A DNA stretch of 64,000 nucleotides, taken from positions 25,606,001-25,670,000 of the forward strand of contig OZ281495.1 of the NCBI GenBank assembly GCA_965637545.1, written 5' to 3'. This document shows positions 13,030 through 61,000 of the stretch, in pieces. Source of the stretch: Phallusia mammillata (lineage: Eukaryota). Position numbers and translations under genes: made by a program. Below the pieces are notes generated by a model. That model was given only the letters and a program-made list of their open reading frames with translations. It was not told where the DNA came from and ran no database searches. Within the stretch, counting starts at the first letter, position 1. Every line of letters begins with the position of its first letter.

Positions 13030-13062
13030 GTTTGTCAATGACTGGATGTGATAATCACCAAA

Positions 13063-37921: not shown

Positions 37922-40900
37922 TTTTTACCCACCCCCCACTTGCTGAATAAACGTCTATACCTGAACGTCTTATCTGACGGAAAACATATTGCTTGTCCCA
38001 AGAAATACGGATTTGGAATGGTGCTCGTACTCGTAACCAGGGCATTAGACGTGCACGTTTTTGCCTAATCCAAGTCCGACATCGTTGCACAAGAGCAAGG
38101 ACAAGTTTAACAAACAAAATCATTTTCAAACATACCCTGATTGTAACATCAACCTTAAAAGTGGACTAAAAGTAGTTCTTTGACTGCGAAAACAGTAAAA
38201 AGGAAATTGATCATACACACAACACAACACATCGGGACTTCATGAGTTATCGAATACCGTCATATCAGACACAGAAACCGAAAAAGTACTATCAACGGTT
38301 GCCTTACCATAACCCCTCGTGAAGCTGACGATTACGTAAACGTTTAGTCGTGTATACTGTGTGTAGTATTTTTTATGTAATCACCAGTCACCAGAGACTC
38401 AGTGCGTTTAGTCGTGATTATAAATAAAGTAGCACTTCAACTTCTACAATCTTTAAATAGAGTGGCCAAATTAAATGTGATCCAGTTTATAACTCCCAAA
38501 CGTCTAAACTAGACCTAAGCGTCATAAATATACTTCGTGCTTGAACCACTTCTTCAAATCAGTCTGTATGAAAACTTCTATACTATTGCAAGTCAATGGG
38601 TGAGCTGAAGTTAAAAGACTTTTAAACCACACGACGTCATTCTCTGTATCCTGTCTGGCGTTTGAATGAATAGGAGCGAACGCTTTGCAAGGTGCAGTCT
38701 GAATTAAATCTTCAGGTTTGTTTCGGTTCCAAATAAGGACATAATGGCTCGTGCATCACTTCTGCATTTATCAATGCGGATCGAGTCAACTTTGTATGTG
38801 AATTCAGTTCCAAAAGAGCGAAACACTAAGTAAATGAAATTACAGCAAACGTCTCTTTGCTGTTTTTTTGTTTTGTTTCATTTTTTACTGTTTACAGTTT
38901 GGCCTTAAACTATCGGGGACTTGAAAACTATCGATATGGATTAAATATGGGGGACACGAGAAGCCTTACAACAGATTTAAATCCGAGTATAATAAAGAGT
39001 TTACCGTTTGACTTCGGAATTTGCCAATACTGTTACAAGGTCCCGGTACAAAGACTAATTATGCCACTAAAAACGCATTTTAAAGGAGTGAAACTATGTT
39101 TATTTTTCAGTTTAACAGTTGTAAAACAGTTACACCACCCACACAGTTTTATAGTGTGAGACTAAAAAAGAATTGGATTGCAAACTACAAAAACAACTTG
39201 GAAAAAATGTTGTAGATAATTTAATCACTAAACCGTAACAACAAACATTAGAAACTAGGGGCCGTACTTAAGTTACATGACCAAAACGTTTAGTAGTTGA
39301 CGCATAAAAATGTCAAAATCATTAAGATTTGAAGAATTGATGAATTTTTAACGAAGCATAAAGCAACGGCGCCACCGTGTGGAAAGACTGGGCGGTCCTT
39401 TAAGAAGTTATGTAAAAACCAGTTTTAAACAACGCAGCTTAGCAAAGGCATTGATACCGATGAAACATAAAAGATTTGTTAAACCTATTTTTCGTGTAGG
39501 TAAATTCTAACAAAACTGTGTCAAATAATAATTGTGTAGAAAAGTCGAGAGTCACAAGAATTACTTAAAACGGAGCACTCCAATTACGTACAGTTGTATA
39601 AGTTTTGTAAGAATAAGTGATCGAAATTATGACACATACATCTAATATGGTTGTACGCACTGACTCCATAGGTTTTGGTCTACTTTTACAAAAGTAACAA
39701 TCCGACGTCACTCGGCCAGACTTTTGCCCAGGGCGATTGTCTGCTATCACTTCTTCATATTACCGTCGCCATAATCGCTCAATCTAAATCGTGGAAGCAA
39801 CGTTTTTGATCAAAATACGTTGATGAGCAGTTTTGGTATCTTAAATATAATTCAGTATTTGATTTCGAGACGAAAGTATTTGATTTTGGTATTTGAAGTT
39901 TGCCATTTTTGTCGATAAGTATTCTGCCACAGTCAGCGGTTAATAAGGACATGCATCAGATTGTAGAGCTTTTTGAGCTTCTCAAGTTGCTCACCTATTT
40001 GGTCATTATTGTATTCGAATTGAATTTATCTTGCAAATGTAAACTATAATAGATTCACGTTTAAAATGTAAAAGAAGCAGTTTTAGGCAATTTCACCGAC
40101 CAAAGGAATAAAGGTCAGCTGTGGCCACAAACGTGCCTAACATGTTGGAATGGTTTTAGTTTGTTTAGCGTCTAATGCGCCAAATGAAAAGCTTTTCGGA
40201 TTTCGAAAAAGTAGAAAAAGTCAATACAAAGCGTTTGCAGTAATCCACTGTTTTGTGCCACAAGTTATTCGCCGTACAGCTGTATACAACCAGACAGCAT
40301 TGCATACACATTGTTTATGGTAAAAGCAAGCGGCTGTGTTTTCAACCAGAATGTTGCGAAACAGATTTGTACGTTACGGCGGCAAAACACCAGTTTAAAT
40401 ACTTTTGTAGATAAATAACTGACAGTAATATGTCAATGAAATTCGATACACCACAACGGAAACTTGAGTATGCGAAACTTGATGGTTCGACTAAAGAGGA
40501 AATTATTAACAGGAAATTTGCGAAAGATAGTAGACGATGCAAATATGGAAAGCTACGAACTTTGACGGCTTTTAGGGCACAATTCGTTTTGTGTGTCGAC
40601 ATAAAAATATCTGGAGTTTTAAAGATCATGGCTATATTCCTAAATCTGTTATCACGGAAACGATAAAAACTCAATCCTTTCTCACGAAGAAACATTTGCC
40701 ATGCATGCAAATTATTTTTAAAATCTTCGAAACTTAATCTATTAATGATGACAGTCGTCACTTAATTTTTTACATCCATATTTCGACCTGATTTCACCAC
40801 TTCGACGCAGAGAGTTTTTCGAAATACTTCGAAAATTAGGCTTTGGAAATTAACTGCGTCACGACCTCCACAGATATAAGCCCAGAAAGCGCGACATAAT

Positions 40901-41303
40901 TCTAGATATCGACGCTGGTGCAAGGCCTGTAATTATCTTAATGGCTATTGACATGTAAACGTCGGATAAACGTAAAATCCTATTACGTGCTGCACACGTG
41001 CGAACAACTTGTAGCGCGTAAAACTACACGCGAGTGTCAATCATTCGGCCTGAAGGCTTAAAGGTGTTTTTCACTGTAAATAATTTGGGATTATTGGCAT
41101 TTAAGAGGTTAGTTAGCGTAGTGCTGCAGGTAGATTACCTTTATTTCGCAGGTGTTTCGTACTTCATTAGTTTTAAGCCGAGTTTTTAGTCTTATGATTG
41201 AATCAAGAAGCTCTTGTTTTGGCACATTTACAACTATGTCTGTATTAAGGAAAAACGATTAGATGAGCACTGAATACGATTTTTTTATATTCTAGGTTTT
41301 AAA

Positions 41304-44300
41304 ATGTATTGCAAAAGCGTTTTACTGTTGCTGTTGTTTACCCATCAAGTGCATATTGTACGTTCTCTCATACCAGTTGAAACTGCAGCAACCAACTGCG
41401 AACCACTTCGAGATCTACTCACAAAGACAATCGTCAAAATATCAGCCTCCTACTTTGCAGACAACCCACGGGCAAATCAAAGTGCAATAAATCCAAATCA
41501 AATCTCACCTTTGACTCCAGACCAGCTTTTCAGAACCTTCTACGGTGAACAGGCTACTGCTGAACAATTCAAGCAAGCTATTCTGGACATATACTACTCA
41601 GAACCTGACCTATTTGCATTAAACAAGTATGACTTAAATCGTATTTACCTGCGAGAGTCAATATACAAGTACGCTAAGGCTTCAAGCTACAAACTAGCAA
41701 GGGAAAAGTTAGGGAACCTACTGTACTTGGGCATTGCAGACCGAACACGTTATTCCCGCCCTTGGAGAGAATCACGCTGTGTGAGGTATTTTTACGTCAC
41801 AATCACCGAGACGATCGTGTTTTCGGAGTTTGAAAGGTTCGTTTTACGTACGATTTTTGACTTAAAATTTGGTTGAATTTAAAAGATATATTTATGTTAA
41901 ATACTCTTTGTTAAGAACATTTAAAAGCATGATTGTAATGGTATTTATGTAAAACAACAATATATGAAAGATTTGCTTGTATAAAAACAAAAATTATTGT
42001 TCGTTTAGGAAAGTTTTCAAATTGTCTAATTAATTGTAAATCGGTTTTGCAGGGTTCGAAATGAGATCGGCGATTTCAGGTTTGGTCGCTTATTGGAGTT
42101 GGGAGTTGGCACAACCTTAGCATTCGTAATTGACGACACTGGCAGCATGACTGAGGAAATTGAGGCAGCTAAAAAAAGAGCAAAGGTAATTAAATCGTGC
42201 ATTGCTTTTCCATGATGACTGAAATAATAAAAAAAACTCAACAAATTGTCTATCTTCAACTAATTAGATTTTGACTATTTTCTGAATTTTATCTTTGTAT
42301 TGGATACTTGAATTTATTTAAACAATGAACTTATTTAACTTAAATATCACTGGAAAATGTAAGCGATAGTATTTTGTTATATGTTATTAACGTAGTTTTC
42401 ATATTATCCGTTATTGACGTCGGCCATTTATTGCATTTAAGACTAGACAAATATGGTCAGCAATTATTACTATGTTGAGTCACCAAAAATGAGTCAAAAA
42501 GCAAATGACCAAAAACCCCAGCCTTTCCTTTGGTTTCGTTACATAGAAAACCCTGCTTGCGTCGTGCTTTTACATCAGCGTTAAACCTCTATTTGGTGAA
42601 ATGTAAAGGCTGAAATTCCTTGTACTTTTCTCAAAAAACTATCAACAAATTCATGTGCAGTTTTTTGAACTCGCCCTTGTTTTGTTTTCAACAATAACCA
42701 ACGAACTATTTAGCCTAAAGATGCCTTTAACACAAGGCTTGGTGTTTGTAAAACTCATTTTAAAAGGCTAGTCCTGAAACAGAATTAATTCCATTTCGTA
42801 GTCATATTGAAAAAAAAACCTATTGAAAAGAATGGCAAAAATATAATCCATGTCCCACAGTATGATGATCTTGCTAATTATGTGCATGAGTTCCCAAAAT
42901 AACAGTTAAAGGGCTAAAAGTAGATTTGTGTCAAGTCGGTGGCACAATTTCGGAGTCCGCTTTATTGTTAATTGCTATGTTGACAAGTGTTTCACCTGAT
43001 AACCACCCGCAGACGACCTGCGGTTGATTTTGTGCGTTTGTTTGAGGCCTTGTGCCGATATGGCGTCACAATGCTCACAGAGGCAGTTGTTTGTTCGTTC
43101 TAAGAAGTGGCGTGTGCATACTTTGTATGTAACTGCGGTTAGGAACTTGCCCAAAACGGCAGAATAGCTTAGTTAAAATAGCAACTGACTTCAGTTTCGC
43201 GGTACGGAAAGCTTTTCTCAAATTGTAAATTATTTCAGAAGTCTGGTTTCTTGTTTGTGGTCTTATTCTATATTTATTGATCACTTATTTTTGACTTTTA
43301 GCGGATTCTGCAACAAAGACAAGGCTCGCTTGATCAGCCGCAAGATTTCGTTTTGGTGCCTTTTAATGACCCCGTAGTGGGTCCGCTCACTGCAACTAAC
43401 GATGCTGACCGATTTATCCAAGCCATTGACAGGTGAGATATCTTCCCATCACATCATTGTTATGAAGCTCCTTGAAAACCAAAGGTTTCGTCCAAGGCCG
43501 GTCGCATGCGCAGACAAACTTAAACATTGTGTTAATTTGGTGGGGGCAAAATAAAATATTCATTTAAAAATTTAAAATACTGCAAACAACTTGTAAACGG
43601 CAAAGTACATTTCTTTACAAACGTTACGAATACCTAGTAATGGTTGAAACAAAATAAACATGTGGTAAATCATATATGTAGTGTTTTCAATAGCAGTTGC
43701 TGTTAAGTAGCTGGTAATTTTTCAGGTTAGCAAGACATGTGAATCAAAATTTGTGTCGAAGAATCAGATTTTATATGCTATCTTTGTTGACAGTTTGACT
43801 GCCAATGGCGGCGGTGACGACCCGGAGTTGGCGCTCAAAGGGATTCTTCTTGCCATAGAAAACTGTAGAGTTGGTTCCACTGTGTTTGTTATCACTGACG
43901 TTGACGCTAAAGATGTTGAACTACAGGTTATTATTGTGTTTAAAAAACTGTTAGTCATTATATGTTTCGTCACATGAAAATTACGACACAGTATAAAACC
44001 ACATTTTTTTAATATACATCAATAAGTAAAAAACAAATAAATTTGACAAATTAAATTGTACATTTTATCGCAGTTAAAATGGGTGTTATAAAAGAGGGCA
44101 AAATCAGAAATAAATATATTTTGCTTTAGGATAATTTGGGTTGAAATCGAATGTAGTAAGTTTATAATAAAAGTTTCTTAAAAGTAAATTAAGAACGAAA
44201 ACGTTTGATTATATGGACTTTCTGAAACCCTGCCAAAGACCCATTGAAGAGTCCTTGCCCCCAGGTTGTAAACCACTGCCTTAATTGCATATGCTTGCGA

Positions 44301-47300
44301 TTTAATTTGTGAAAATTAACTTGTTTTGTTTGCATTTCAGGATCTTGTGGTGGCTCAGGCTAAACAGAAAAGCATCAAGGTTACTTTTCTGCTCACCAAT
44401 ACGATCGTTAACAATGTTTGCAAAACTCAGCCAAGGTATGCTACAGTTAAACTCGGCCAAAATGTCAAAACAAGTTTGAAATACTGACGAAGTGTTGCAT
44501 TTTATCTACAAAACGTGTCGACTGTACTCAAACAATTATTATGTTTTGAAACAGCAAAGATAGCTCCGACTTGCTAAAGCGACGGTGCCTTACTGCTTCG
44601 TTTAAGCACGGCTTAGAACTGTACAAATACATCGCTGATAGCACGAGTGGAAAAACTTTGGTGGTAAAGGAAGGTGACATCCTAAAAGCGACTGAAATTG
44701 TCGATACATCGGTGAAACAGGGAATCGCGGTTATATCCCGAAAGTATATCACAGGTTAGACTTTAATTAGGGTGACCCAGCTTCTTGCCCGTATGGCACA
44801 GTGTTAGTGAATTTTGCACACAGATTTATTTTGTTTCGGGTTAATGTTTGCGTCATAAGGTCACATTCCTTTGCATATTTGGTTTAAAGAGCACTTTTTT
44901 TTATTTACTGCGTCATAAAATGCGGTGTTTTAATTGCCAAAAATTGCACTTTGAAAGTTTACTTTTCTTTTAAAAAAGTCGCAAGAACGCGCATTTTCTG
45001 AAATCTAAAACAAAACATATTTTCGAGCCTCACAAAGATACTTTTTTTCCGAGCCACGCACTATTTTATGATATCTAAGTGTTCTTACACGAGGTATTCG
45101 ATATTGAAGGAAATTTGTTTTGTGCATTAGATAGTTTCAAAATGTTTACGATTGACCTGCTACAGAGATTAGTGTCTCCCAATCCTGCTTTCTACAAACT
45201 GGAAACATCCCAACCAGTGGAACCACTTCTGTATTCCCAATGCAATTTGCTATAAGCGTTGTTTTAACACACTCATATATGAGAAATACATTTATTTGCG
45301 GCAAAAACATTTTAATTAAGTTTTAACCAGAGCATTCTGACGCAGGTGGAAGAACTTCTTACCCTCTTAATATCGACAGTTCTATAACTGAAATATTTGT
45401 TGAGTTTGAAGGAGATTGTCGCGACATCACTATCTCTTTTCAACGTAGGATCTTTTTAATTGAGGTGAGTCATAAGTGTGCTTGTTTTTGAAAAACAATA
45501 CACTTAAGCACATTTGTGACTTTGTTTTCCTTTTAACGATGTATGATTCAAACTTACTTAGTTGTAACATTATAAGTTAAATGTTTAGTATTAGAATTTG
45601 GAAAAAAACGTTTTTTTGTTGTAACCCACTTTTTTAAAGACCACCTGTCGCTTGTGACAACGTAACAACTTATACATCTTCTACCAACATCGAATAAAAT
45701 TCGAACTGCTTTTAAATCAAGTTTGTTTTCAGGATCTTGTGACAATAGGAACTTTTATGGAAGGTCGAATCCCGGTAAAGCAAAACTTTGGTGTCTGGAA
45801 TGTAAAGGTCACGGGCTGGCTAGGATGTTCAATAAAGGTAAAAGCTTATATGTTACAAGGATAATAGTCGTTTTTTCGGAACGTATTTTACGATTTCGTG
45901 TATGCGAGACGTTATTGATTTATATTTTTTCTGGGTAAAGCGTTTTAACTGTATTTTTTTTAAAAAGTTTCTTGATAAATATTTTTATGGTGATTGTATT
46001 GTTTTATTGAGATTTTTTACAAATCTCAGTATGTGCAGGTAAATGTACGTTAAACTTTTTCTGTATACCAGATCGAAGCTCGCACCACAAAAGGTTTCAT
46101 ACAAACCCTTGGCAGAAAGTCCCTCAATAACGCTGGCTTGAACGTTACTGAAAAATTCGAAGGTAGGAATTGGATTTCAAACGAGAAGTGCATCTAGATT
46201 TTAAAATTGTGATTTGTATTTTAGGTCAGCCTTTAATAACGGATAACATCGTGGTCCTGTTGGACACCTACCGTAAAGAGTCTGGTGACAAAGTTGGATC
46301 TGTCAAATTTATCTCCAAGGCAAGATCAGCAGTGCTCGATACGTTTAGGTATGAACGAATAAAAAACCACATTTGTCATTTTATATACCACTTGGTGTGA
46401 ATGCATTACTTTTGCTTTAAGGATGGCAAATAATGGGAGTAACCATTTCAAGATCGAACCTTTGAATCGACATAATCAAGCATTCTTGGTGTCTATTGAG
46501 GGTGTTGATTCCAATGGTTTTCCGTTTACAAGAATAATGAGGACGGCGATTGAATACGTTCATGTGCAGATAGAGTGCGTTGCAATCCACAACGTAACGT
46601 TTAGGTAAAACAAAATAGCCTACTTTATGGAATAACAACTTAGTTCTATCATATTTATAGTGTACTGGTGGATTTAGTTTCATGCTTTTGTTCCTATTAC
46701 TTTGACAGTTTAAATCAAGAACATTGGCGTAATGTTTTTGTTAATTTAATTTTAGACAAACTACGATACATTAGGCCTACCATACGTCCTCTTTTTGGAG
46801 GACATGTCCTCCTTTTTAACAAAAACCAAGTTGTCCTCCGAGGACAAGAAAAAGTGCCCAAATGTCCTCCTTTTTCAAGAATTTCTGACTTACCAAATAC
46901 ATATGTGACAATTATCCCCTTGAAAACAACCAAATATGCATATTCAGCTAATTTTCGCAGAATGCACGTAAATATTACATATTTTGAACACAATCTTATT
47001 TTATTGTTGTGATGTGATAAATGTTAAACTTTATCCAAACTATTCTATACCGTCTAATTTCTGAGGCTTTTATTTTTTGAGGGCCCTTAAAGTATTTTTC
47101 AATGTTTTTTTTCAACAATGTGTCCTCCTTTTTGGGGATGCAATTATGGTAGGCCTACGATACACTTAATTTTACTTAACATTCTTTACAACTTTAATTA
47201 CTACATTTTATGTGAACTGTTTAGTCCTATGTGTATACACATAAGGCTATACCCATATGGCTTACCAGTTTTCGTGTTAAAAACAAAACAAAAAAAACAT

Positions 47301-47860
47301 TTTTTTATAGACCGGGCGATACTGCAAATGTCAGTGTAAGGATTCAAAACTTTGGGACAAGGCAGCAGTCGTTCCAACTGGACGCAACAGACAATCAGCA
47401 GTTTGTGGACGGTGTAAAACCGGGTCGCGTTACATTGGCAGCGAGACCAGGTGTTGCTACCGTAACTGTCTCTCTTACTGCATCGAAAACCGCAACAGTT
47501 GGAACTTCGACAACAATAACAATAACAGGTCGGTGTACAAATTTTAAATATTTAAGCAAAAAGTTAAGATGAACAAAAATTTATGCGTGAGTTCCGGAAA
47601 GACTCTTGTCAGGGGTTCGAATCCCACCGCAAACAACATTTTTCTAGCCTATGCTTTACCACATAAGAATGCTTGATGACCGGCTGATTCGGTACAAAAC
47701 GCCTTTAATGGGCTTGAATTGTTTTTTTATCGATACCAACTTATATGCTATGTTTAATTAATGGTGATTACTGTTGTAATACTGGTGTCATTTTAATTAT
47801 TTTAGCAAAAAGTTCTTCATCCGACACACTACTGTACAAAACCTGCTACCTAACCGTCGG
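41304..47860 (+). CDS. VWA7: VWA7/hemicentin-type half of the fusion gene
   Basis: Signal peptide; AREKLGNLL; LAFVIDDTGSM.EEI.AAK; FVLVPFNDP.VGP; GGGDDPE; VFVITD..AKD; SG; then beta-rich Ig-like exons (G.WNVKV; PGDTANVSVRIQNFG). The motif order is that of VWA7/hemicentin VWA proteins. Confidence 0.78.
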
Positions 47861-50800
47861 TCAAAGAGCTCGCCCTCGTGTGGAGGAATTCTACGTCACA
47901 ACCAAAATTAACTCACGCATCGCAGAAACACTTTTTACAAGTGTTGTGCATAACGAGTAAGTGTTAGGTATATCAACTTGAAACAACATAAAAAATGTCA
48001 TATTTTAATATTTGGACCTTTTGGGGTTAAAGAGTATAAAACTACGTGTGCTATGAAACGTGAAACTGACATTGAATTTTTTTACCAGTGCAGCTGTGGC
48101 CAGAGAGGCAGAATTTTTTGTCCTCTTGCCAAGTGAAGCCTTTGTAACAGACTTTCGGATAAAAATTGGAAACGAAACGTACCGTGGAAGGATCGAGGAA
48201 AAGGGAAAGGCAGCGAAAGTGTATGAACTTGCAAAGGTAATATAAACCAATCACATAGTTAAAATTAAAAAACACTTTGAGTAGCATAAACATTGATATG
48301 ACCGCAATTCTCCCCCTAACCTATAACCTCAATTGCCTAAAGCATGGTGCATTTGCATTACTGACAATAGTGTTCGGATTCGGCCCTCGTAAATTTTTTT
48401 CATTTGTATCTGGACCTTTGACAAAACTATTTGAGTAGCCTTGACAGAGTTATTCAAATATCTTGTTTAGTCCAGTGCTCAAAATGTTAAGTAGACTCAA
48501 GGTTTTCTGGATCATTTCATAACTAGGAATATATTTCGCAAATTCACAGCAAAGGCAACTCACCGCCGGTCACGTGACATCAAGGGACAGGTCAACGTCA
48601 ATATTTCGAACTTCGGTCAACTTGGAACCCGGGATGCGAGGAACCTTTGAACTCACTTACCAGGAACTCCTACGGAGAAAAAGCGGAAAGTAAAAAAACT
48701 TTTACAATTTTAAGTTTGGCTAAAAATATTTTTCTCGTTTTATTTTGTTTAACAAACAAATATCGAGTAATATATTGGTTGAAAAACATCCTTAATATAA
48801 ATGTATGTTCTTATTTGGGATTTGTCTGTGTGGCCATAAGGCATTTAAAAGCAAAACAAACGGGTTTCTTATAAAACTGCATTGAATTTCGTGTAACATC
48901 CAGCAATTTTCAGATATACGTATGAGGTTGCAGTAAGGATGTTACAGCCCGTTGCCAAATTTTCACTTTTTGTGTCGGTTTGCGAGACGAACAACGTCGA
49001 GAATGTTAAGGTGCTCGGATATGACACGGAACAGACCACTCTTATTGGTCCACAGCCAATAGAAGGCGCCATTGTGTTCAATAGAGGGTAAATACAAAAT
49101 AAAACAATGTTTTATCACCATTCAACTGCACCGGCCTCTTTGCAGCTAGATTCTTTATCGCCCATCCCTGTAAATAAAACTAAAAGGATATTTTTAATGA
49201 CGATGTGATTGCTAAAGCTGATATAATGGCTGTACTTTATTAACATCCAATTTTTTAGCGAAAAATGGCTGATTATTTAAAAACGTTTAACTATGTTTGA
49301 TTGTTTGAGGAGATATCGTATTTACTCGTTTGTAAAGCGCCCTCGATTATCACAAGCAGCATTTTTTGACATTGTCAAGCAATGTAAGAAATGTAAACAT
49401 GCAAAAAATGTTTAACGCACCTGTTAAGACGTTAAAGTTTTCAGTTAAACTCTGTAAATAACTCTTTCACTTTATGCTGTGTATGATGGCGCGTATTTTT
49501 TTTCATTTTATAACTGTGTAATAAATGCGCATAAAAAAATTCAACAATTCTTTATCACAGGCGTACCGCGAACGTTATTTACCAACCAACGCTTTCCCAG
49601 CAAGCTACCATCTCTCCGTTTGGAATTCACGGCAAATTTGCGATACAATACGAATTGTCAAGAGTGGTGGGAAAAGGCGATTTCATGATTTCCGGAAGGT
49701 AGGAGTCAATTTGAACGCAACTTTACACGCAGGAAGTTTATGGCCATCTGGGTTGTTTGATAAGGTTCAGGTATCATTGAACTTGTTCGACAAAGTTTAA
49801 TCTTGTGTAACCTCAACTACTTTAAAAAACAAGCCGATTTTTATCCTTAAGAAAAATGTTAGTAGTTTCTGTTGGGTAAATAAACTTTATCCGACGCATC
49901 TGCTTTTTAACACAAAATCTTGTTATTTTGGTTAGGTACTTCTATAACAACTTGACTGTTTTTGTAGTTACTTCGTTAACTTTCTTGCTCCTGCCGGTGC
50001 ACCAATGCCGAAACGTGTTGTGTTTGCTCTCGACGTGTCAGCATCGATGTACGGCCAAAAGATGTCACAAGTGAGAAGCGCGATGTCGACCATCTTGGAC
50101 AGTTTAGCTCCAGATGTAAGTCTAATTACCTCCATGAATAACATTTCGACATCAAACGGTTTCGAATCGCATACACTGTATCGCAACCGTTTACTGAAAA
50201 ACATATTACATGTGGTCATTGAATCCATGTGCGATATCAAACTTTACTCATTTTGAGAATCAGTTAAAATAAACACACATTTACAACTTGCATCAGCCCT
50301 GCAGCGTACATTGCAGAGCAGCAATCACGCCATAGCCCTATAGAAATCATATTACGCCAGGGCTATTGAAGGCATTATGCGTAGTCAGTCGGTCACCAAG
50401 TATTTCCACTTAAGCGCGAGTCACAGGAAAAGCTTCTTTGGTGGGTTCGAATCCCACCGCAGGCTAGATTTTTCTCTTGACACAGATGCGTGGTTTGTGG
50501 TGGCACGTTAGGTTAAGTTTTGTTTTTTTGCAACAGAGATCACATTAAATAGAAACAAACTTACTTACAATGCATTTACTAGGATGAGTTCGCTATTACA
50601 ACCTTTAACGGCACAGTCGATAAATGGACACCGGTGGGATACAACTTGTCTCTGGTGCCGGCATCAGCAGAAAACAAACGCGCAGCAAAGGCGTTCCTAA
50701 ACGGTGTTGAGCCCCAGGGTGGCACCAACTTGCTGAAAGTCATATTTGAATCCGTCAAGCAGCTTCGCGATGCTGCAGAAGCGGGATCCGAAGGTAAGCA

Positions 50801-53800
50801 ATAATTTTCTGTTGATTTTCTACACGAATTCATTTGTCAGTTTGGCAGAAAATTATTATTAAGAAGTAGGATTTCAACGTTCTCATTGTTCAAGGCTCCA
50901 AGTTGTCCTTTTTTGTAAATATGTTTCAGATTTGTGGTAACAAAAATTCTTCTGCACAACGTACGCAGCAATGGAAATAAATTTTAAAATTGGCATTTTA
51001 TCATCTTTTCCAGCATGTCAAATGTAAAACGTTTGTTTCTTTTCTTGTTTTAAGATTCGCCACTAGGTGGAGCGTCACAAGTTTTGCCCACAACTGACTT
51101 TGTCGTCTTGCTTACTGATGGACAACCGACTATAGGCATCACTGACTGGGAAACTATTCAGTTCAGTGTTCACCGCTACAACAAGTAAGTTTAAACTTTA
51201 AACAATTTAAAAGTCAAATGAGGTTTTTTGTCAATGAATGAAATCGCTGTATTATCGGTTCCCCTAAAGTTGGTATGTTTGAAATATACATAAAAAAGTT
51301 TGACCGTGGGGCTGCCGTATCTGTATTACATAATTTGTAAAAAGATTTACAAAACTTATTCTAACTACCAGTGACCTGTCCATATTGGACTAGCTGTTAT
51401 CTTAGAACTAAGACCCCCCTCATATCAATTTGTTATTATATAGCAAAACATTCGCAATTCACACAATCGGACTTGGAACCCTGGTCGATATGACGTCATT
51501 ACGAAAGATTGCGTCACAGAACCGGGGTACTTCGACTCAAGTGTTTGCAGATATCGACGCTCACGTGCAGGTAAATGTGATTGGTTTTGTTGCCATGTCA
51601 ACGTAATTCAGATTTGTGAAAGGTTAGGATTTTGTAGGGAAAAATTGATAGCCACTGAATCTGAATACTCGCTTACTAGAACCATGTATATAGCGTTCCA
51701 ACAAATACCTGTTGCCAGTTAAGACATAAATGAATAGCTGGGATCAGCATGTTGCATTTTGTTTAAACTGGAAAATCGGGACATTTTCATGATAAATGTT
51801 GCCGATTTAAAGTAAGTACTTCAAAATCAACTCCCAAAATTGTCATAAACTTGATGTGCTAACTAATTAAGGCTTTATTGTTTAAATCGCAAAAGCGCGG
51901 TAATTTAGGAACAAGTAATTTTTGCTTTTATGCATTTAACTTGGGAAAAAGTGATGACAAACCAAACACTGAAATTTGTAGATTGCAAGTTTCTTTGATG
52001 CGATTTCGCGCCCTGTGATGGACCAGGTAATGGTGGACTACCCCCAAAAGCGAGTGGCATCTGTAAACAACGCGGAATACCCATCTTTCCACGCGGGCGA
52101 TGAACTTGTAATTACAGGGCAACTACAGTCACGACCAACTGCACTAAATGACCCTGCAAGAGTTTTCAGGCGACGGAAACGGGCTACCCAGTTCCCAGTC
52201 ACAATCACCGGTAAATATACAACTTTTAACTTATTGCTTACTTGTGATGATGTATTAACGTTGAAGTAAATACACGAAGTGACTCTGAATGAGAAAGTTT
52301 GGGAGGCTGTTCTACCTTACAAAGTGGCATTATCACTCCGATAGGAACATGTCTGTACTTCATTTCAATCATGCATTCCTACCTTTTTGTTGTACAATAG
52401 TTTGGAACACCTAACAGTACTTTCAATTAGAATTAAACTCACGTCACAAGAGATACACATTTAAGAATGTATTTCCGTTCCCACACAAAAAGTTTTATTT
52501 TCAATAATGTGATTTTAGTAAATCAAAGGTAATCAATTTTAGGTAATATATTATCTGTTTAAATTTTGTTGAAGAACAAAAGATCCAATACAGGAAAAAA
52601 CATACAACACTTATTGTGTTATCAAATGCAAACTAAGACTTCTCTAAAAGCCCATCTGTGGTTTCCGACCTCTGCTCTATTTTTATGTATGTTTGATAAT
52701 AATCACATTAATTTACGTTGTAATAATAACAACACGTTCATTATGTTAACAAAATGAAACGTCCGAACTAATGGGAAAATTACGGATGACTTTTATTCTA
52801 TAGGATTGACGAGAACTGGGCAAGTAACGCTAACGGAAGAAGTGACTCCCCGGGCATTCGGTAGTTGTCAGACAGACAACGTGAAGGTATGACTCGAATT
52901 TTATTTACTTAGTGAAGTATTGTACGAGACAAGTTAGGGCTGTTCGTTTTCAGATCCAAAGCTTTTCTGAACGACTACAAGTCTTCATGAAGTTAAAGAG
53001 TTTGTTACGTGAAATCGCTGCAGCGGAAAACAAGACAAAGGAAGAAATTTTGAGGAGTTCAGCCCTAAAACATTCATTAAGGTAAGACAGTATTGTTATA
53101 GATGCATGAATTTTTAAAAAAAAATTACTTCCCCTCAAATTTTCTTTAAAACTAACGGCAAAATTTTCAACAGGTATGGCTTCGTTACTCCCGGCATAAC
53201 ATCTATGATCGTCGTGAAACCCGGAGATCTGCGCCAAATTGAGAAAGTTATCACCGCGGAAGAAGCGAATCGAGCTCGAACCACCGAGGTTGAGCCAGAA
53301 GCTTTATCAGCCGCACCAGGGGATACGCGAGTTTTCAAGTTTGCAAAACTACCTGGCATTGACCCGTCATTATTTGGAAAACCTGCGAACAATGTCAGGA
53401 TGGAAGTTATAGGCGATCCTCACGTTGTGATCGATATAAACCAAAACACAAGAGTCTGTTTTAATTGGCTGGGACAAGACAATAAGGTAGAGTTATGTTG
53501 AAACCAATAAACAAAAGTTTCTGCCACTAAAGTTTTAGATTTAGGGTTCTTAACCAGGGGTGTATGTACACTCTTAAGGCTAAGGGTACCAACTATAAAA
53601 GCTGGAGGTACAAAAAGCTGCAAAACATAAAAGCTATGTATGGATATTTGTAGAAAGTACATGTTAGTTTGACTTTTTTTTTTAAAAATAACTTTTTCTT
53701 ATTTCTTTTTTTCTCTGCTTTTTGCAACATCCACACAAAATCTAACCAAATCCTAGAATTTACTTTTGCGCTAAATGTAAATTACACTTCTCATTTTTTC

Positions 53801-55403
53801 GTGGTGAGACGTTATCACAAGTTTTGCAAACTTCAAAGGACTCAGGTATGTTGACAAAGTTTACAACTTTAAAGCCTGGTTTCCAACAGACACAAAATCA
53901 AGAGTTCGAGAAATTGTGGTTACAAATCTGTGTCTATTTTTCAGTATTATAATATTCTTCGCAACAACGAAAGTGGAGTAAACGTTAATGCAAAGCTAAT
54001 TGGAGTTCCAGGCAATTTTATCTACCAACGTCCATGCTTTGTCGGTGAAATAGGAATAGTGCTCCGAAAACTCAATATTTCAATAAAAGTAAGTGAAAGT
54101 CTAAATTGATTAGTTCAGCTACTAATAGGTTTTTCTGATCAAGCTTTTATTTAATTCCCCCAAACAAATAAAATCTACATTGATCATTATTTGGTTTAGA
54201 TTGAGCCTTTGTTAGTGTCGGTGAAATTGCCCGCAGGAAACCTTAACTTGTCCACGGAAGTATCTACAAGGCAAACGTTTTCTGGGATTTCTATAAACAT
54301 TGTCAACCTATCTGAAATTTCATCAAGGATTTCTGTCTCGTTGGAGGACAATTTGGAATTTATGGTAACACTAGATTTTTAAAATATACACAAGCGCTTA
54401 TTCTACTGTGTCATATCCTTGCAACATATTCTTTTTTTAAAAAAGCACATCAGATCAGAGTTGTAAACGGGCCTGAAATTGGAGCCCGAACCCGGCCCGA
54501 ACCCGATTCGTTTTTGAGAAGCCCATTTAAGCCCGAAAGTTTGATTGACAGACGTATACATTGAAGCACCAGTAAAGACGAAGACAACAAACACAATAGA
54601 CAATAATAGACAAATTGGTCCTGAACAAGGCGTTTTAGCGCTGTTTGACATTAGGTCAGATCCAGCAACTAGCTACTCAGCAAGTTAAATTTATTCAAAA
54701 AAATACTGACACAGAGTGTAAAGTCAGGCCCGTTTTTTTTAAGAAACCTAAGCCTGAACCCTGCCCGAAAAGCCCAACTTTCAACTCTACATCAGATATG
54801 CTTGGTATTTAATGACTTGTTTGTCAGGTAAAAGCGCATTTTGACTTTACCGACCTCGCCAAGACGAAGCACCTTGATCTTTCGGTTGCAAAAACTTTCG
54901 GTTTTACGGGTTCGACTGATGGTTTGCTTGGACAGTTTGTGAGTCCAAATGCAACCAAGTCGGCGGAAGTTATCACCACATTCAATTCCGAAGTCGCTAC
55001 CTTGCGTTTCCGGTAAGCGGATAAATCAAAAAGGTTATGTAATCTCAAAAGCCTTGACTGATACCTTGTTCCTTTGCCACAATTGATTATTTTGCATTTC
55101 TATCTGCAATTTTACAGTTTTGTTATAATTACATTTAAAAAATGGAACTATTTACATCTACCAAGCGCTATGATAAGTATTTTTTATTTGATTTCCCTAA
55201 TAACATTTTTACATTTTACATTTCATTTATGTTGTACCTTTTTATCCAGTCAACAGTCGGTGAAAGTTAAGGAGTTTGGTGTTTACGACACGTACGCGAA
55301 ACGACGGGTCAAATGTTGGCTTCTGAACAACTTTCTCAATTTGTTAAATGAAAAACAGGAAGATTACGAAATCCCGGACATCTTTACTTCTTCAGCAAGA
55401 TGA
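41304..55403 (+). CDS. Secreted VWA7-like / inter-alpha-trypsin inhibitor heavy chain fusion protein, 29 exons, ~1598 aa (SP - degenerate VWA7 N-domain - VWA - Ig-like region - VIT - VWA - ITI_HC_C)
   Basis: Phase-consistent GT-AG exons: 41304-41785, 42053-42185, 43302-43432, 43794-43926, 44341-44435, 44555-44754, 45331-45464, 45733-45837, 46072-46162, 46225-46348, 46422-46604, 47311-47528, 47806-47956, 48089-48236, 48550-48689, 48914-49087, 49561-49698, 49968-50115, 50583-50793, 51055-51184, 51444-51570, 51982-52210, 52804-52886, 52954-53081, 53174-53486, 53945-54088, 54200-54364, 54828-55012, 55250-55403. Total 4797 nt with no internal stop. Confidence 0.87.
46772..47157. mobile_element. 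hAT-like MITE in intron 11 of the fusion gene
   Basis: TIRs TAGGCCTACCATA / TATGGTAGGCCTA; TSD CGATACAT / CGATACAC; GTCCTC(C)TTTTT subterminal repeats. Confidence 0.8.
47585..47718 (+). mobile_element. Family 2 tRNA-related SINE-like copy (intronic)
   Basis: B-box GGTTCGAATCCC followed by the same 3' block (GACCGGCTGATTCGGTA..CGCCTTTAATGGGC) as 10331-10502. Confidence 0.65.
47861..55403 (+). CDS. ITIH: ITIH-type half of the fusion gene (VIT, VWA, ITI heavy-chain C-terminal domain)
   Basis: VIT: INSRIAET.FTSVV.N, LP.EAFVT.F, FELTYQELLRR. YFVNFLAP. MIDAS FALDVSASM.G.K, GGTN, VLLTDGQPT.G. Then GDELVITG, ERL, SLRYGFVTP.TSMIVVKP, GDPHV...CFN, NVNAKLIG, GLLGQF, CW..NN...DY.IPDIF, all recalled from ITIH1-6. 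Confidence 0.9.
50365..50478. mobile_element. Rearranged family 2 copy: inverted 3' block joined to a forward B-box block
   Basis: 50365-50405 resembles the reverse complement of the family's 3' block; 50415-50478 has GGTTCGAATCCCACCGCAGGCTAGATTTTTCT in forward orientation. Confidence 0.5.
54456..54789. mobile_element. hAT element with CCCGAA repeats in intron 27; family shared with 28578-29002
   Basis: Ends CAGAGTTG / CAACTCTA; perfect 8-bp TSD CATCAGAT; internal sequence aligns by eye with 28578-29002. Confidence 0.85.
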
Positions 55404-55714
55404 TCGATATTGTGTTTTTTGTAATGTTTATGTTTTTGCTTGACCGATCCAAATGTTTTGGATGCCTATAAATTTTATTTACGTACAATTGTAACGGAGT
55501 GTAACAATTTTAATATATTGTAAGATATCAAACTGTGATAAAAAATAAGCTCACTTGAAATCAGTTGACACGCAAGTCGTAAAAACAAGGTATGTATTTC
55601 ACCTAAAAGGCACTGGGTGATCGTTGACACTAACATCCTAATATTAGAGGGACAGATCCTAAAAAAGAATTATATTTAAAAACTCTACGTTCCGTTTGTG
55701 GCAATCACCTAAAC

Positions 55715-56581
55715 CAGGGCTTCCCAAACTGGGGGTCGCGACCCCGGAAGGGGTCGCTTAACAAACTTGAGGGGTCGCAGAGAGCTGTACCAATTTGTGC
55801 AAAAAGTACTCAATACACTGGCGCAGAGTACGGGGATGTGATGGTGCCGCACACCCCCGGCCTTTATCTTTGTATAACGTCAAAATCGCATCTTTGTTCA
55901 AGTTACGTCGGTTTTAAAACGCCATTGATCGAACGGACGTCGGTTGAAACGCAACAATTGCAATTGTTTTGAAATACACAGGCATTTTAATGCAGCATAA
56001 ACATGATATATAGAGTTACAAACGTTTAAGCATTCTTTGGCGCAATAACTTTCTCTAATAAAAAATAGGCAATAAATTTACGAGTTCTAAGCAGTGTTTA
56101 ATATCCGTTTGCAAAGCACTGCAACGGCCTAAACTTGGTCCAAGGTGAGCTCAGTTTATGCGTCAACAATACATGATTTGAAACTTGAATTGCTATTACT
56201 TTATTTTCCGCCCTAACAAATTACTTAAAACCTAAATCGTTGTGAAACTTGCCGACTCGGTAAATCGTCCTTTACGAACGTGCGTATGTTCTCGACGCAC
56301 AGCAAACGTTCAAACCACACGAAGAAATTGTGACAAGTGCCCATTTGCAAAACAATCTTTCAGAAACTAAGGCTAAAGCACGTAAAAGTTATCGGTGTTT
56401 GAACGTGTAAAGTAGTCGACTCCGAGTACCGGTAGGTTGTTTTTAGTTTTCGCTCCAATTAGGCGTTTCAATAAATACAACAAACGTTTTTTCGCACTGT
56501 TTATCATATTATCCTTGAAGGGTCGCGAAAAATTTAAAGAGATTAAAAGGGGTCGCGATCAAAAAAGTTTGGGAAGCCCTG
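55715..56581. mobile_element. hAT MITE, longer copy of the 5100-5814 family
   Basis: Same 16-bp TIRs; TSD ACCTAAAC (55707-55714, 56582-56589); carries an internal segment (~56145-56335) absent from the other copy. Confidence 0.92.
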
Positions 56582-56589
56582 ACCTAAAC

Positions 56590-57100
56590 TACTGGTTCCC
56601 AACCGGTGGTAGCGGGACGCGACGACATTTCTGGTGGTATGCGAACACCTTTCGGTATTTTATTTATTCTGTATTTTTGTGTCACATAAAGTTTCGCCTT
56701 GTATTAATAGCCTAATGGAAAGCAAGCACAGGCCCTATGCAGGTTGCGCATCAGTGTATACTGAGCTTTTCTTTGTAGCCTACTACATTGTTTTGTTCTG
56801 TGTGTAACAGTTATCTGATTGAAAATACTTTTAAGCATGGTTGGTACGCGGCATGGGCGTCCGCAGGAAAAAATACAGGGGAGGGCAAAACTATCGTCAC
56901 ATCGCCGTTCGATAAACGGTATTTCAGAACAAAAATCATCTGACTGTGCTACTCATTCTTGCCAATCCCAAAGTAGCAAAATAATACAATAAACACAATT
57001 TTGTGCCCCCTCTTGCCCCCCGCTGCGGACGCCCATGGTACGCGGTGACGCTGCGTTACCTCACAGAGGTACGCGACCACGGATAGGTTGGGAATCACGG
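56590..57100. mobile_element. Older hAT element abutting the previous MITE at the same target site
   Basis: Ends TACTGGTTCCCAACC / GGTTGGGAATCACGG; flanked by ACCTAAAC on the left and ACCCAAAA on the right (2 mismatches). Confidence 0.65.
56852..57037. mobile_element. Short hAT MITE nested in 56590-57100
   Basis: TIRs CATGGGCGTCCGCAG / CTGCGGACGCCCATG; perfect 8-bp TSD GTACGCGG. Confidence 0.9.
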
Positions 57101-58005: not shown

Positions 58006-61000
58006 ATGGGTGAGTCAAATAGTTCAAAACAGGTAAGACCTTACAGTAATTAAGTAGTCTCTAAACATGTTTGGTGCTGACACTGACCACTGCACGCGGT
58101 GCCTCTGGTCCTTACGCCATGCAGTTATGCCAGGCCCGTTTGTTTAAAACAGTGTTTTTGTAGCGATAACAGTCCTAAACCGACAGATGTGACTTTATAG
58201 ATGTCTGTTTCGAACCTTGTCAAGCGTTTTCGCGTTTTACTGTACTATAGGCTATAATATAATGCCTAGGCCTACCAAAAGAAACTATTTTTGATACACT
58301 GCTTCTCAATTTGCATTCCATCTTAGAACATGTTATAATACTTATCTACAGGATACCAAATACAAATTCTCCTCCCTGGTTTCCGAGTACGACATTGCTA
58401 AGTTTTGGACGAAAAATGGTGTAAAGGATTATTTGGGCTGTGGCTCGTTCGGAGCTGTTCGTCGTTGTTGTTATGGTGATTTTGGGACGTTGGTGGTAAA
58501 ATGCTTTCATTTGACGGGAACAAATGAGAATCACGAAAAAGTATTAAAAGGGTTAGTAAGCATGGTTTGATGTTAAAGCTAAGAACCACATCAATAGTGA
58601 TTGTGTCTTTTGTTTTGTTTTACCTTAGACTAGGGTAACCATGTCTGTATTTTTAAGTATCTTAGGCGACACCAAATATGCGGTATAATGCTTAAAATAC
58701 CGTGTCGTTACATGTTACTGTAGCGCTTTTGTTTCCGCGCCTAAGGTTGCTCTAGCGGCTAGCCGGTGAAACCAGTAAATGGACCACACGCTACTCTTAA
58801 TGCTTTCGCAAACACAAATGCGCATAAGCAAATCTGTCTTTTGCACTTGTCATAAAAGCGAGCTGAAATACGCAGGTCAACTTACAACAAACTTGGGCTA
58901 AAGTCGCACTTAATAAAATAATAAAAACGAGACCAATCGGCACCGAAAGTATACACAAGAAATGAACGTATCTAATCACCGACCAGACAAGTCTGCCGGA
59001 TCACAATTGCTTCGCCCTCACGTTAGGGAGCCACTATAGGGGAGAAACACGAGTTACTTGAAGGGTTAATTGACAAATGTCCCGAAGGTGTGTATAATTA
59101 GAGCAACGCGCTGGAATTCTAAAAATGAAAAACAATAAAACAAAAGACTCACAAGTTTGGGAAATCTTTATATCCAGGTTGAAATCAGTTGACAACAAAA
59201 GACTGTTATAAGAAACTAATAAACAGAAAGTAGCTTAGGTTGGGAACCTAAGTAAAACAAAACTAAAGGTGAAACAAAAACAAAAGAGATGAATAACATG
59301 CAGTGACTGGCCGTTAGGAGTCTTTTTGAACATTAATCTCAGACACGGTTTTACGCCAAAATTCCAGACATGTCCGGGTAATTCCGGTCGTCTGGTAACC
59401 CTATCGTAGGCTTTAAGTGCTCAATTTAAGGGATACATACCATTTTTTATTTATTGATGTATTTTCTGTTTGTACAAATGCAATTAATACCTTCTACAGT
59501 GTCTCAAGAGAAGCGAACATCTTATCCACTTTGCACCACGACAACATTGTCCAATTGCTCGGTATCACAAGATGGGCTAACTGTATTGGTATAGTAATGG
59601 AGTACATTGACGGCGGAACTCTAAGCGACTTCGTCTTTAACGAGAAAATTAATCATATCGACTGGGCGGTTCGACTTCGTATCGTCCAGCAAATTACTTG
59701 CGTGTTGGAGCTTTTGCACAACTATGATCCGCGAAAGTTTATCTGCCATGGCGATTTGAAAACAGACAACGTCTTGCTGACCTCTGACCTCTCAGTCAAA
59801 GTCGCTGATTTTGGTTCTGCCAACATCGTCAAGGCAACAGGGGCCACGGCGGCTTCTTTTGAGCTGGCACCAACTACACAACACACACAGTGGTACGCGG
59901 CACCTGAGCTACTGATAGATGTGACTCGTAAAAGAACTCCAGCTATGGATATGTACAGGTTTGTTTCCCAAGTATTTCAGAGCATTTTTAAACCTTCTTT
60001 TCAGACAAAAATACGTTTTGTTTCGTATTAGGTTATTGACAATCCGCGGAAAATACGGACCGTTATTAGTCTAGGCATCCATCCGAATCAGAGTTTTGTT
60101 TTCAAAAATACGAGCGTAATTCAGGCCTGTCTTTACATTCCGTGTTCGTAATTAAAAAAATACCTAGCTAAGTAGTTAGTTGCTGGGCTTAACCTAATGT
60201 CCAACAACCCTCAAACATCTTGTTTAAGCCATTGTGCAATTTTGTCCGTTGTATATGTCTTCTTTATAATAGTCTGTACTATATTATTGGTTTTATGTAC
60301 AGAATGTCAATTAAACTTTCGGGCCTAAACGGACTTCTCAAAAACGATTCGAGCCCGCTTACAAATTTGATCCAATTATTGTTTGCAGTTTGGCAATGAT
60401 CATGTATGAGGTTGCGGCAAGACAACGCGTGTACAAAGGAGCCAAAGCACCTGTCAACATCATCATTACCCTCATCCAATGCGGACACGCGCGTCCTGAC
60501 CTTATGCAATTGGACGTCGAGAAACCCACAACTTCGGTCGACACTGAGATTTTCGAGTTTTTTCGAAACAGTATGATAAAGAGTTGGGACAAGGACCCGA
60601 AAAAACGAGCAACAAGTGGAGAAGGTAAGATAAATTCACTATTGACGATTGACAACTTAATAAACGCCCCGCAGGATAACTCACTCATTGCGATTTGTAC
60701 AAAATCCGCAGTATTGTATGAGATGCGCCAGATCGTTACAAAATGCGACGAATCCAAAATGCATCTGGAAAGAAATAAGTTGTCGAAGGAGATGCAACGT
60801 CTGAGGGATCTTACAATCACTGGCAAAGAAGAAGAAAGTCAGGTGGATGTTTGTTTGCAGGATTTTTCCTATCCCTTTCGATCCGTAGGAACAGCCAGTA
60901 CAAGTAAGCAAACTTAATCCTGCTTTGCTATCTCTTTAGTTAGCTACCTTAAATACAATGGCATTACACGCTTTCGAGCAGACTGCCATTTTGTTCGAAT

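What the first reader, a model, noticed from the sequence alone, without database searches (positions are those of the whole stretch)
41304..55403. VWA7-ITIH chimera: one secreted ~1600-aa protein with two different VWA domains and a full ITI heavy chain
In vertebrates VWA7 and the ITIH chains are separate genes. Here a VWA7-type module (hemicentin-like VWA with DDTGS, plus Ig-like region) runs in frame into a complete VIT-VWA-ITI_HC_C chain. The junction lies inside exon 13 (47806-47956: ...YKTCYLTVGQRARPRVEEFYVTTKINSRIAET...), with no stop, intron or second signal peptide, so it is not an artefact of merging neighbouring genes. Both MIDAS motifs look intact (DxTxS and DVSAS, each with downstream T/D residues). 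I do not know this architecture from any described protein. It suggests a bivalent, metal-dependent matrix or plasma cross-linker for tunic assembly, clotting or pathogen trapping (function is inference).
Basis: partly seen in the sequence, partly recalled or inferred. Interest (0 to 1): 0.86.

Follow-up and report, generated by a model that had tools for sequence, protein, structure and literature searches.

The report
Ascidian VWA7–ITIH fused matrix protein

Summary
Observation confirmed. A 29-exon, all GT-AG gene (41304-55403, +) encodes 1610 aa. Exon 12 (47311-47528) joins exon 13 (47806-47956) in frame.

Sequence alone did not exclude two genes. Exon 12's frame reaches a stop 14 codons past the donor. 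Exon 13's frame is open upstream to an ATG at 47745, followed by a hydrophobic stretch.

Three results settle it:
- **Domain span:** the Ig_VWA7 domain crosses the junction and VIT starts 8 residues later, so exon 13 carries the end of one module and the start of the other. An AlphaFold model agrees.
- **Conservation:** the same phase-1 intron, linker and architecture occur in Ciona, Clavelina and Styela.
- **Public record:** CAB3257366.1 (Phallusia mammillata, "ITIH3") equals residues 210-1610, junction included.

Probable RNA runs hold the word share expected if both halves are spliced mRNA. A Ciona tunic proteome has peptides from both halves of the ortholog.

The architecture is therefore real and old in ascidians, and already deposited. 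I found no paper describing it. The cross-linker function remains inference. Interest is moderate.

The parts
41304..55403 (+). Whole gene: 29 exons, 1610 aa, VWA7-type module fused to an ITIH-type heavy chain
   Evidence: Gene model. Residues 210-1610 are identical to public protein P0001 = CAB3257366.1.
41304..41836 (+). Exon 1: signal peptide (aa 1-22) and a shortened VWA7_N-like region
   Evidence: Aligns with the N-termini of the Ciona, Clavelina and Styela orthologs. hhalign against vertebrate VWA7 N-termini gives probability 91.5%, E 8.6e-07, covering only the first part of VWA7_N.
42117..44669 (+). VWA_4 (hemicentin/VWA7-type VWA) domain, exons 2-6; DDTGS at 42132-42146
   Evidence: Pfam PF25106, E 9.5e-45 on P0001. 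Motifs are conserved in the orthologs.
46594..47858 (+). Ig_VWA7 domain (aa 613-706), spanning exons 11-13 and so crossing the junction
   Evidence: Pfam PF23619 on P0001 404-497, profile positions 10-102 of 104. Exon 12 alone reaches only profile position 83. In the AlphaFold model the beta-sandwich covers residues 7-116, with the junction at 95|96.
47311..47528 (+). Exon 12: most of Ig_VWA7; ends in phase 1
47529..47805 (+). Intron 12 (277 bp, phase 1). It holds the read-through stop TGA 47570-72 and an in-frame ATG at 47745 followed by a hydrophobic stretch
   Evidence: The phase-1 intron lies at the same place in Ciona (359 bp), Clavelina (280 bp) and Styela (402 bp). The ATG-plus-hydrophobic extension is not conserved there.
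47806..47956 (+). Exon 13, the junction exon: last strand of Ig_VWA7 (LLYKTCYLTV, 47829-47858), then the start of VIT (from 47883)
47883..48660 (+). VIT domain (aa 715-825)
   Evidence: Pfam PF08487, E 3.3e-25. Model residues 116-256 superpose on human ITIH1 (6FPY) at Z 10.1, rmsd 1.7 A, 31% identity.
50014..51558 (+). ITIH-type VWA domain with a canonical MIDAS (DVSAS 50032-46, GGTN 50718-29, LTDGQ 51111-25)
   Evidence: Pfam PF00092 and PF13768. Motif conservation.
52168..52182 (+). Polybasic RRRKR (aa 1207-1211), a candidate furin-type site
   Evidence: An RRR[KR]R-type run is present in 8 of 9 ascidian homologs. Cleavage was not tested.
53412..53423 (+). GDPH (aa 1371-1374), the counterpart of the ITIH DPHFII processing and transfer motif
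   Evidence: GDPH[VFI] is invariant in 9 of 9 homologs. Cleavage was not tested.
53972..55331 (+). ITI_HC_C domain (aa 1405-1587)
   Evidence: Pfam PF06668, E 2.6e-19.

Best explanation
The locus is a single gene of Phallusia mammillata. It encodes one secreted precursor of 1610 aa.

Shown:
- Domain order: signal peptide, shortened VWA7_N-like region, VWA_4, a beta-rich middle region, Ig_VWA7, then directly VIT, a VWA with a canonical MIDAS, a polybasic site, GDPH and ITI_HC_C.
- The two modules abut without a linker inside exon 13.
- The fusion is old: the same junction intron, linker and architecture occur in ascidians of four genera. By my own knowledge of ascidian taxonomy these fall in three orders.

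Inferred:
- The protein is an extracellular matrix or tunic component that works like a vertebrate ITI heavy chain.
- After secretion it would be cut at the conserved Asp-Pro of GDPH. Its new C-terminal Asp could then be ester-linked to a glycosaminoglycan chain.
- The ITIH VWA/MIDAS and the added VWA7 module would each give a protein-binding surface. One chain could then tie a glycan matrix to a second ligand.
- The conserved RRRKR may allow a further furin-type cut.
For: Gene model and junction.

Domains above Pfam cut-offs on the public protein.

Ig_VWA7 runs across the junction. On P0001 it covers 404-497 and the junction is at 479|480. VIT starts at 506.

AlphaFold model of P0001:385-640 (mean pLDDT 75). 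One strand spans the junction and the next strand (LLYKTCYLTV) comes from exon 13. The beta-sandwich matches cover model residues 7-116 (Z 11.5). The ITIH1 VIT match covers 116-256 (Z 10.1, rmsd 1.7 A).

Nine ascidian proteins from four genera have the same Pfam set. Their linker LLYKxCxLxVGQ+xRPxVExF is conserved.

All four genomic loci have 29 exons and a phase-1 intron at ...IT.T|A....

Public record CAB3257366.1 contains the junction. It is probably from the genome-independent Velvet/Oases transcriptome of PMC7237864; that attribution is my inference.

Eight probable RNA runs from two studies hold 0.22-0.24 of the 31-letter words of 44700-50600. Expected shares are 0.239 if all exons of both halves are present as spliced RNA and 0.12 for either half alone.

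The Ciona tunic proteome identified the 1586-aa ortholog. Peptides map at 41-51, 153-164 and 438-454 (VWA7 half) and at 1287-1296 (ITIH half).

GDPH, RRR[KR]R and the MIDAS residues are conserved.
Against: The RNA origin of CAB3257366.1 is inferred, not verified. That record starts inside exon 2, so it does not show exon 1 joined to the rest.

No short RNA-derived protein fragment spanning the junction was found.

In the Ciona proteome tables, the N-half peptide is also assigned to F6QVU4 and the C-half peptide to F6QW56. Older Ciona models may therefore be split or fragmentary; I did not check this.

The C-half peptide is weak (PEP 0.086) and shared with other accessions.

Runs X10-X12 hold only 0.11-0.13 of the words. 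This could mean one half is expressed alone, or simply low coverage.

The whole functional part (cleavage, glycan attachment, ligands) rests on analogy with vertebrate ITIH.
Confidence: 0.9

Rival explanations
1. There are two adjacent genes, or an operon, wrongly merged. A VWA7-like gene would end at the stop at 47570-72. An ITIH-like gene would start at ATG 47745 with its own signal peptide.
For: Both features exist in the window. There is a stop 14 codons past the exon 12 donor. There is also an in-frame ATG followed by a hydrophobic stretch of signal-peptide strength, 61 nt upstream of exon 13.
Against: The VWA7-like protein would lose the last strand of its Ig_VWA7 domain, and the ITIH-like protein would begin with that strand. 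The upstream ATG-plus-hydrophobic extension is absent in Clavelina and Styela and is only 13 codons in Ciona. The exon 12-13 join is in the public Phallusia record and in all orthologs. Only 172 bases separate the stop from the ATG.
Confidence: 0.03
2. The fused mRNA is the main product, but the locus also makes separate minor isoforms. One would be a VWA7-only form, by read-through or polyadenylation in intron 12. The other would be an ITIH-only form starting at ATG 47745.
For: The read-through stop and the in-frame ATG with a hydrophobic stretch. Three runs hold only 0.11-0.13 of the words, close to the 0.12 expected for one half alone.
Against: These features are not conserved in the other three genera. 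Both isoforms would carry a broken Ig-like domain. Low coverage explains the low shares equally well.
Confidence: 0.08
3. The fusion exists only in the precursor. The two modules are cut apart after translation and act as separate VWA7-like and ITIH-like proteins, as in vertebrates.
For: ITIH-family proteins are known to be processed. This protein has a conserved polybasic site and GDPH.
Against: Neither site lies at the junction; they are at aa 1207 and 1371, against the junction at 688|689. The junction has no conserved dibasic motif. The model places the Ig-like and VIT domains back to back without a linker.
Confidence: 0.04

Closest known systems
Vertebrate inter-alpha-trypsin inhibitor heavy chains (ITIH1-6; solved structure of human ITIH1, 6FPY)
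   Same: VIT, then a VWA with DxSxS...T...D MIDAS, then ITI_HC_C, in the same order. A GDPH motif sits at the position of the DPHFII processing site. Identity to ITIH4 over the ITIH part is 30-32%. The VIT model superposes on 6FPY at rmsd 1.7 A.
   Different: Vertebrate chains of about 830-1300 aa start with VIT near the N-terminus, at residue 35 in ITIH4. Here about 690 residues of VWA7-type module precede VIT in the same chain. Attachment to bikunin or hyaluronan is unknown in ascidians.
Vertebrate VWA7 (about 920 aa; for example P0042 of Oncorhynchus kisutch)
   Same: Collinear VWA_4, then a beta-rich middle region (GBD_Hemicentin detected in the Styela homolog), then Ig_VWA7. These are the best non-tunicate hits to the N-half: E 1e-28 to 1e-31, most of the best covering 97-100% of the query. 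The N-terminal region is related to the first part of VWA7_N.
   Different: The ascidian module lacks the second half of VWA7_N, the part with the conserved DFYSHSNW and CSHGG motifs. The VWA7_4 domain was not detected. The roughly 160-residue C-terminal tail of VWA7 is replaced by a whole ITIH chain.
Deposited ascidian homologs: CAB3257366.1 (Phallusia), XP_009859948.1 / A0A1W3JK15 (Ciona), and Clavelina and Styela 'ITIH3-like', 'ITIH5-like' and uncharacterized proteins
   Same: Same architecture, same junction intron and 29 exons. The Phallusia record is the product of this locus.
   Different: None in kind. The Phallusia record lacks the first 209 residues. The names mention only ITIH, so the VWA7 half goes unremarked.
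Hemicentin-1
   Same: Shares the VWA_4-type VWA domain, and the GBD_Hemicentin domain in the Styela homolog.
   Different: Hemicentin continues with long Ig, EGF and fibulin-type arrays (my knowledge, not tested). It has no VIT or ITI_HC_C.

Membership tests
[quoted passage not shown] | VIT domain | tested here: met
   PF08487, E 3.3e-25, above the cut-off. Structural match to ITIH1 at Z 10.1.
[quoted passage not shown] | VWA domain with a MIDAS (DxSxS, T, D) | tested here: met
   PF00092 and PF13768. DVSAS, GGTN and LTDG are conserved in the homologs.
[quoted passage not shown] | ITI_HC_C C-terminal domain | tested here: met
   PF06668, E 2.6e-19, covering profile positions 2-189 of 189.
[quoted passage not shown] | Conserved Asp-Pro processing motif (DPHFII type) upstream of the C-terminal domain | tested here: met
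   GDPHVVI at aa 1371. GDPH[VFI] is invariant in 9 of 9 homologs. This shows the motif only.
[quoted passage not shown] | Cleavage at that motif and ester linkage to chondroitin sulfate or hyaluronan | not testable with these tools
   Needs biochemistry.
[quoted passage not shown] | VIT at the N-terminus of the chain, directly after the signal peptide and propeptide | tested here: not met
   VIT starts at aa 715, after a VWA7-type module.
VWA7 | VWA_4 (hemicentin-type VWA) domain | tested here: met
   PF25106, E 9.5e-45.
VWA7 | Ig_VWA7 domain | tested here: met
   PF23619, E 4.4e-12, 46.6 bits against a cut-off of 27.
VWA7 | VWA7_N domain (PF25107) | tested here: inconclusive
   No Pfam hit. 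A profile-profile match (probability 91.5%) covers only the first part; the DFYSHSNW/CSHGG part is missing.
VWA7 | GBD_Hemicentin and VWA7_4 beta-sandwich domains between the VWA and the Ig | tested here: inconclusive
   GBD_Hemicentin is found in Styela P0034 (30.9 bits) but not in the Phallusia protein. VWA7_4 is not detected in any ascidian homolog scanned. The region is present and aligns among ascidians.

The most novel reading that the evidence does not exclude
In ascidians, every VWA7-type and every ITIH-type protein my two searches returned was fused to the other module. A stable fusion of this kind would mark the two families as partners in one pathway (the 'Rosetta stone' argument). 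It would predict that the functionally obscure vertebrate VWA7 acts together with ITI heavy chains in glycosaminoglycan-matrix assembly. It would also predict that the ascidian protein is a self-contained version of that two-component system, used in the tunic.
Probability: 0.2. Interest if true: 0.6.

Novelty: new variant of a known kind. Interest (0 to 1): 0.4.

Why it matters
VWA7 has no established function, as far as I know. A conserved, lineage-wide fusion to a well-studied matrix protein gives a concrete, testable hint about what VWA7 does.

It also shows that the ascidian proteins deposited as 'ITIH3' are not simple orthologs of vertebrate ITIH3. This matters for anyone who reads tunicate proteomes or single-cell atlases by gene name.

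Beyond that it is an ordinary case of domain shuffling in an extracellular protein.

Tried and rejected
**Read evidence.** No letters of 47273-47308 were sent to any search tool afterwards. Only closed local scripts read the whole window file, including one local tblastn with the window as subject.

**Rfam and tRNA scans** of 40000-57000 found nothing.

**Representative search with exon 12 plus read-through.** The only eukaryotic relative was P0001. All six of the other hits that I scanned were Ig-like repeat proteins without VIT or ITI_HC_C, so exon 12 is too divergent to trace orthologs.

**The look-up of encoding contigs for P0001:** no record.

**Search for short fragments spanning the junction (P0001:385-585):** none.

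**ITIH-half search.** It returned only 9 hits because of the candidate limit. It even missed the Styela homologs, so it says little about stand-alone ascidian ITIH genes.

**ESM Atlas search.** Only ordinary ITIH and bacterial VIT-VWA clusters appeared. There was no large cluster with the fused architecture.

**Earlier-findings search by words:** nothing.

**Paralog in the window:** none.

**Cleavage site at the junction.** The basic residues after VGQ are not a conserved furin motif.
Full report
**What is in the window**

The + strand from 41304 to 55403 holds a multi-exon gene. A splice-aware model, forced only to begin at the ATG at 41304, gave 29 exons with GT-AG borders. After adopting the exon 7 acceptor used by the public protein it encodes 1610 aa.

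Exon 12 ends with one base of a codon (G) and exon 13 supplies two (CA). The join is in frame and reads ...TITIT|AKSSSS....

Pfam scans of single exons found these families, in this order:
- VWA_4
- Ig_VWA7
- VIT
- VWA
- ITI_HC_C

There is no Rfam family or tRNA in the region.

**What the sequence alone leaves open**

- The frame of exon 12 continues past its donor for 14 codons to TGA at 47570-72.
- The frame of exon 13 is open upstream to an ATG at 47745. A hydrophobic stretch follows it that is as strong as the true signal peptide.

A VWA7-like gene followed after 172 bases by an ITIH-like gene was therefore a fair rival and had to be tested.

**Read evidence failed**

I worked beside those places and sent none of their letters to any search tool.

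The shares are still informative. My exon map predicts these shares:

| Case | Expected share |
|---|---|
| All exons of both halves present as spliced RNA, no intron | 0.239 |
| VWA7 half alone | 0.117 |
| ITIH half alone | 0.122 |

Both halves are therefore expressed together in those libraries. This does not prove the joint.

**A public protein from the same locus**

A search of 1.84 billion representatives with exon 12 plus its read-through found P0001 (1401 aa). It matched at 94% identity over query residues 1-77. The mismatches are consistent with its sequence continuing as AKSSS where the read-through reads GRCTN.

[quoted passage not shown] It is identical to residues 210-1610 of my model. 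So the window is from Phallusia mammillata and the fused reading is already deposited.

The paper PMC7237864 describes a genome-independent Velvet/Oases transcriptome of this species. Its transcripts were named by the best Ciona hit and were 'being deposited at ENA'. That it is the source of this record is my inference. If so, the joint has been seen in RNA.

**The decisive argument**

On P0001 the junction lies at 479|480. Pfam places Ig_VWA7 at 404-497 (profile positions 10-102 of 104) and VIT at 506-616. Exon 12 alone reaches only profile position 83. So exon 13 encodes the last strand of the VWA7 Ig-like domain and, eight residues later, the start of VIT.

An AlphaFold model of P0001:385-640, built on nine ascidian sequences, has a mean pLDDT of 75. 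It shows a strand running through the junction and a next strand made of LLYKTCYLTV.

Structural comparison splits the model cleanly into two domains:
- A beta-sandwich at residues 7-116 (for example 4ZIU: Z 11.5, rmsd 2.6 A over 107 residues).
- The VIT domain of human ITIH1 at residues 116-256 (6FPY: Z 10.1, rmsd 1.7 A, 31% identity).

A two-gene reading would break the Ig-like domain in both products.

**Conservation**

A search with the VWA7 half of P0001 returned eight further ascidian proteins with the same Pfam set:

| Genus | Proteins (length in aa) |
|---|---|
| Clavelina | 1618, 1602 |
| Ciona | 1586, 1602 |
| Styela | 1794, 1725, 1408, 1731 |

- **Linker:** it is conserved throughout (LLYKxCxLxVGQ+xRPxVExF).
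- **Gene structure:** in the genomic loci of Ciona, Clavelina and Styela the gene again has 29 exons. A phase-1 intron sits at exactly ...IT.T|A....
- **Alternative start:** the ATG-plus-hydrophobic extension seen in the Phallusia intron is absent or trivial in the others, so it is a chance feature.
- **Outside ascidians:** vertebrate VWA7 proteins (about 920 aa) and ITIH proteins carry only their own half.
- **Within ascidians:** all proteins that either search returned were fused. The searches are word-limited and length-limited, so stand-alone genes are not excluded.

**How complete is each half**

The ITIH half is complete.
- It has VIT, a VWA with a canonical conserved MIDAS, and ITI_HC_C.
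- GDPH is invariant at the place of the vertebrate DPHFII processing motif.
- A polybasic RRR[KR]R is present in 8 of 9 homologs.

The VWA7 half is collinear with vertebrate VWA7 (VWA7_N, VWA_4, GBD_Hemicentin, VWA7_4, Ig_VWA7), with differences.
- Its N-terminal region matches only the first part of VWA7_N (hhalign probability 91.5%).
- GBD_Hemicentin reaches threshold only in Styela.
- The VWA_4 metal-site motif (DDTGSM) is the family's own and lacks a conserved threonine.

**Function**

The architecture and its conservation are shown. The localisation comes from one paper. The Ciona tunic shotgun proteome (PMC7401272) lists A0A1W3JK15, 1586 aa. I matched its peptides to P0031 at 41-51, 153-164, 438-454 and 1287-1296, so both halves are represented. 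The last peptide is weak and shared with other accessions.

The rest is inferred by analogy with vertebrate heavy chains, from my own knowledge of that family:
- Cleavage at the Asp-Pro of GDPH.
- Ester linkage of the new C-terminal Asp to a glycosaminoglycan.
- Matrix stabilisation through the MIDAS.
- The VWA7 module adding a second binding unit.

**Novelty**

I found no paper that mentions VWA7 together with ITIH in this sense, or with tunicates. The proteins are deposited but named only after their ITIH half. I rate this a new variant of a known kind: a lineage-wide domain fusion, real but of moderate interest. Its best use is as a functional lead for VWA7.

**Surroundings**

There is no second copy in the window. 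Upstream lie two intronless SH2-SH2-tyrosine-kinase reading frames. Downstream lies a protein kinase gene. The Ciona neighbours differ.

Noticed in passing
window 2453-4348 (+) and 13042-14889 (+): Two long stop-free reading frames (632 and 616 codons, no intron needed). Each has two SH2 domains followed by a tyrosine kinase domain, a SYK/ZAP-70-like layout. They lie about 10 kb apart on the same strand. They could be tandem retrogene-like copies.
   Followed up: partly
window 58295-62138 (+): A multi-exon gene downstream with a protein kinase domain (Pkinase, E 1.4e-26 on 59417-60028), followed by a 302-codon open frame without a clear family.
   Followed up: partly
window 47745-47805: Intron 12 of Phallusia alone holds an in-frame ATG followed by a hydrophobic stretch of signal-peptide strength, directly upstream of exon 13. 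It is not conserved in Ciona, Clavelina or Styela. It is probably chance, but it is the one place where an ITIH-only isoform could start.
   Followed up: yes
L002 6001-18830 and 21300-24830: In Clavelina lepadiformis two fused VWA7-ITIH paralogs (1618 and 1602 aa) lie tail to tail, 2.5 kb apart. Styela clava has at least three distinct homologs. The family has therefore duplicated as a fused unit.
   Followed up: partly
   Followed up: partly
proteins P0054 and P0060: Outside chordates the VWA7-type module is joined to other C-terminal domains. A shrimp protein of 1524 aa adds fn3, and a protein from a sequencing-run assembly adds a HYR domain. The module seems prone to fusion.
   Followed up: no
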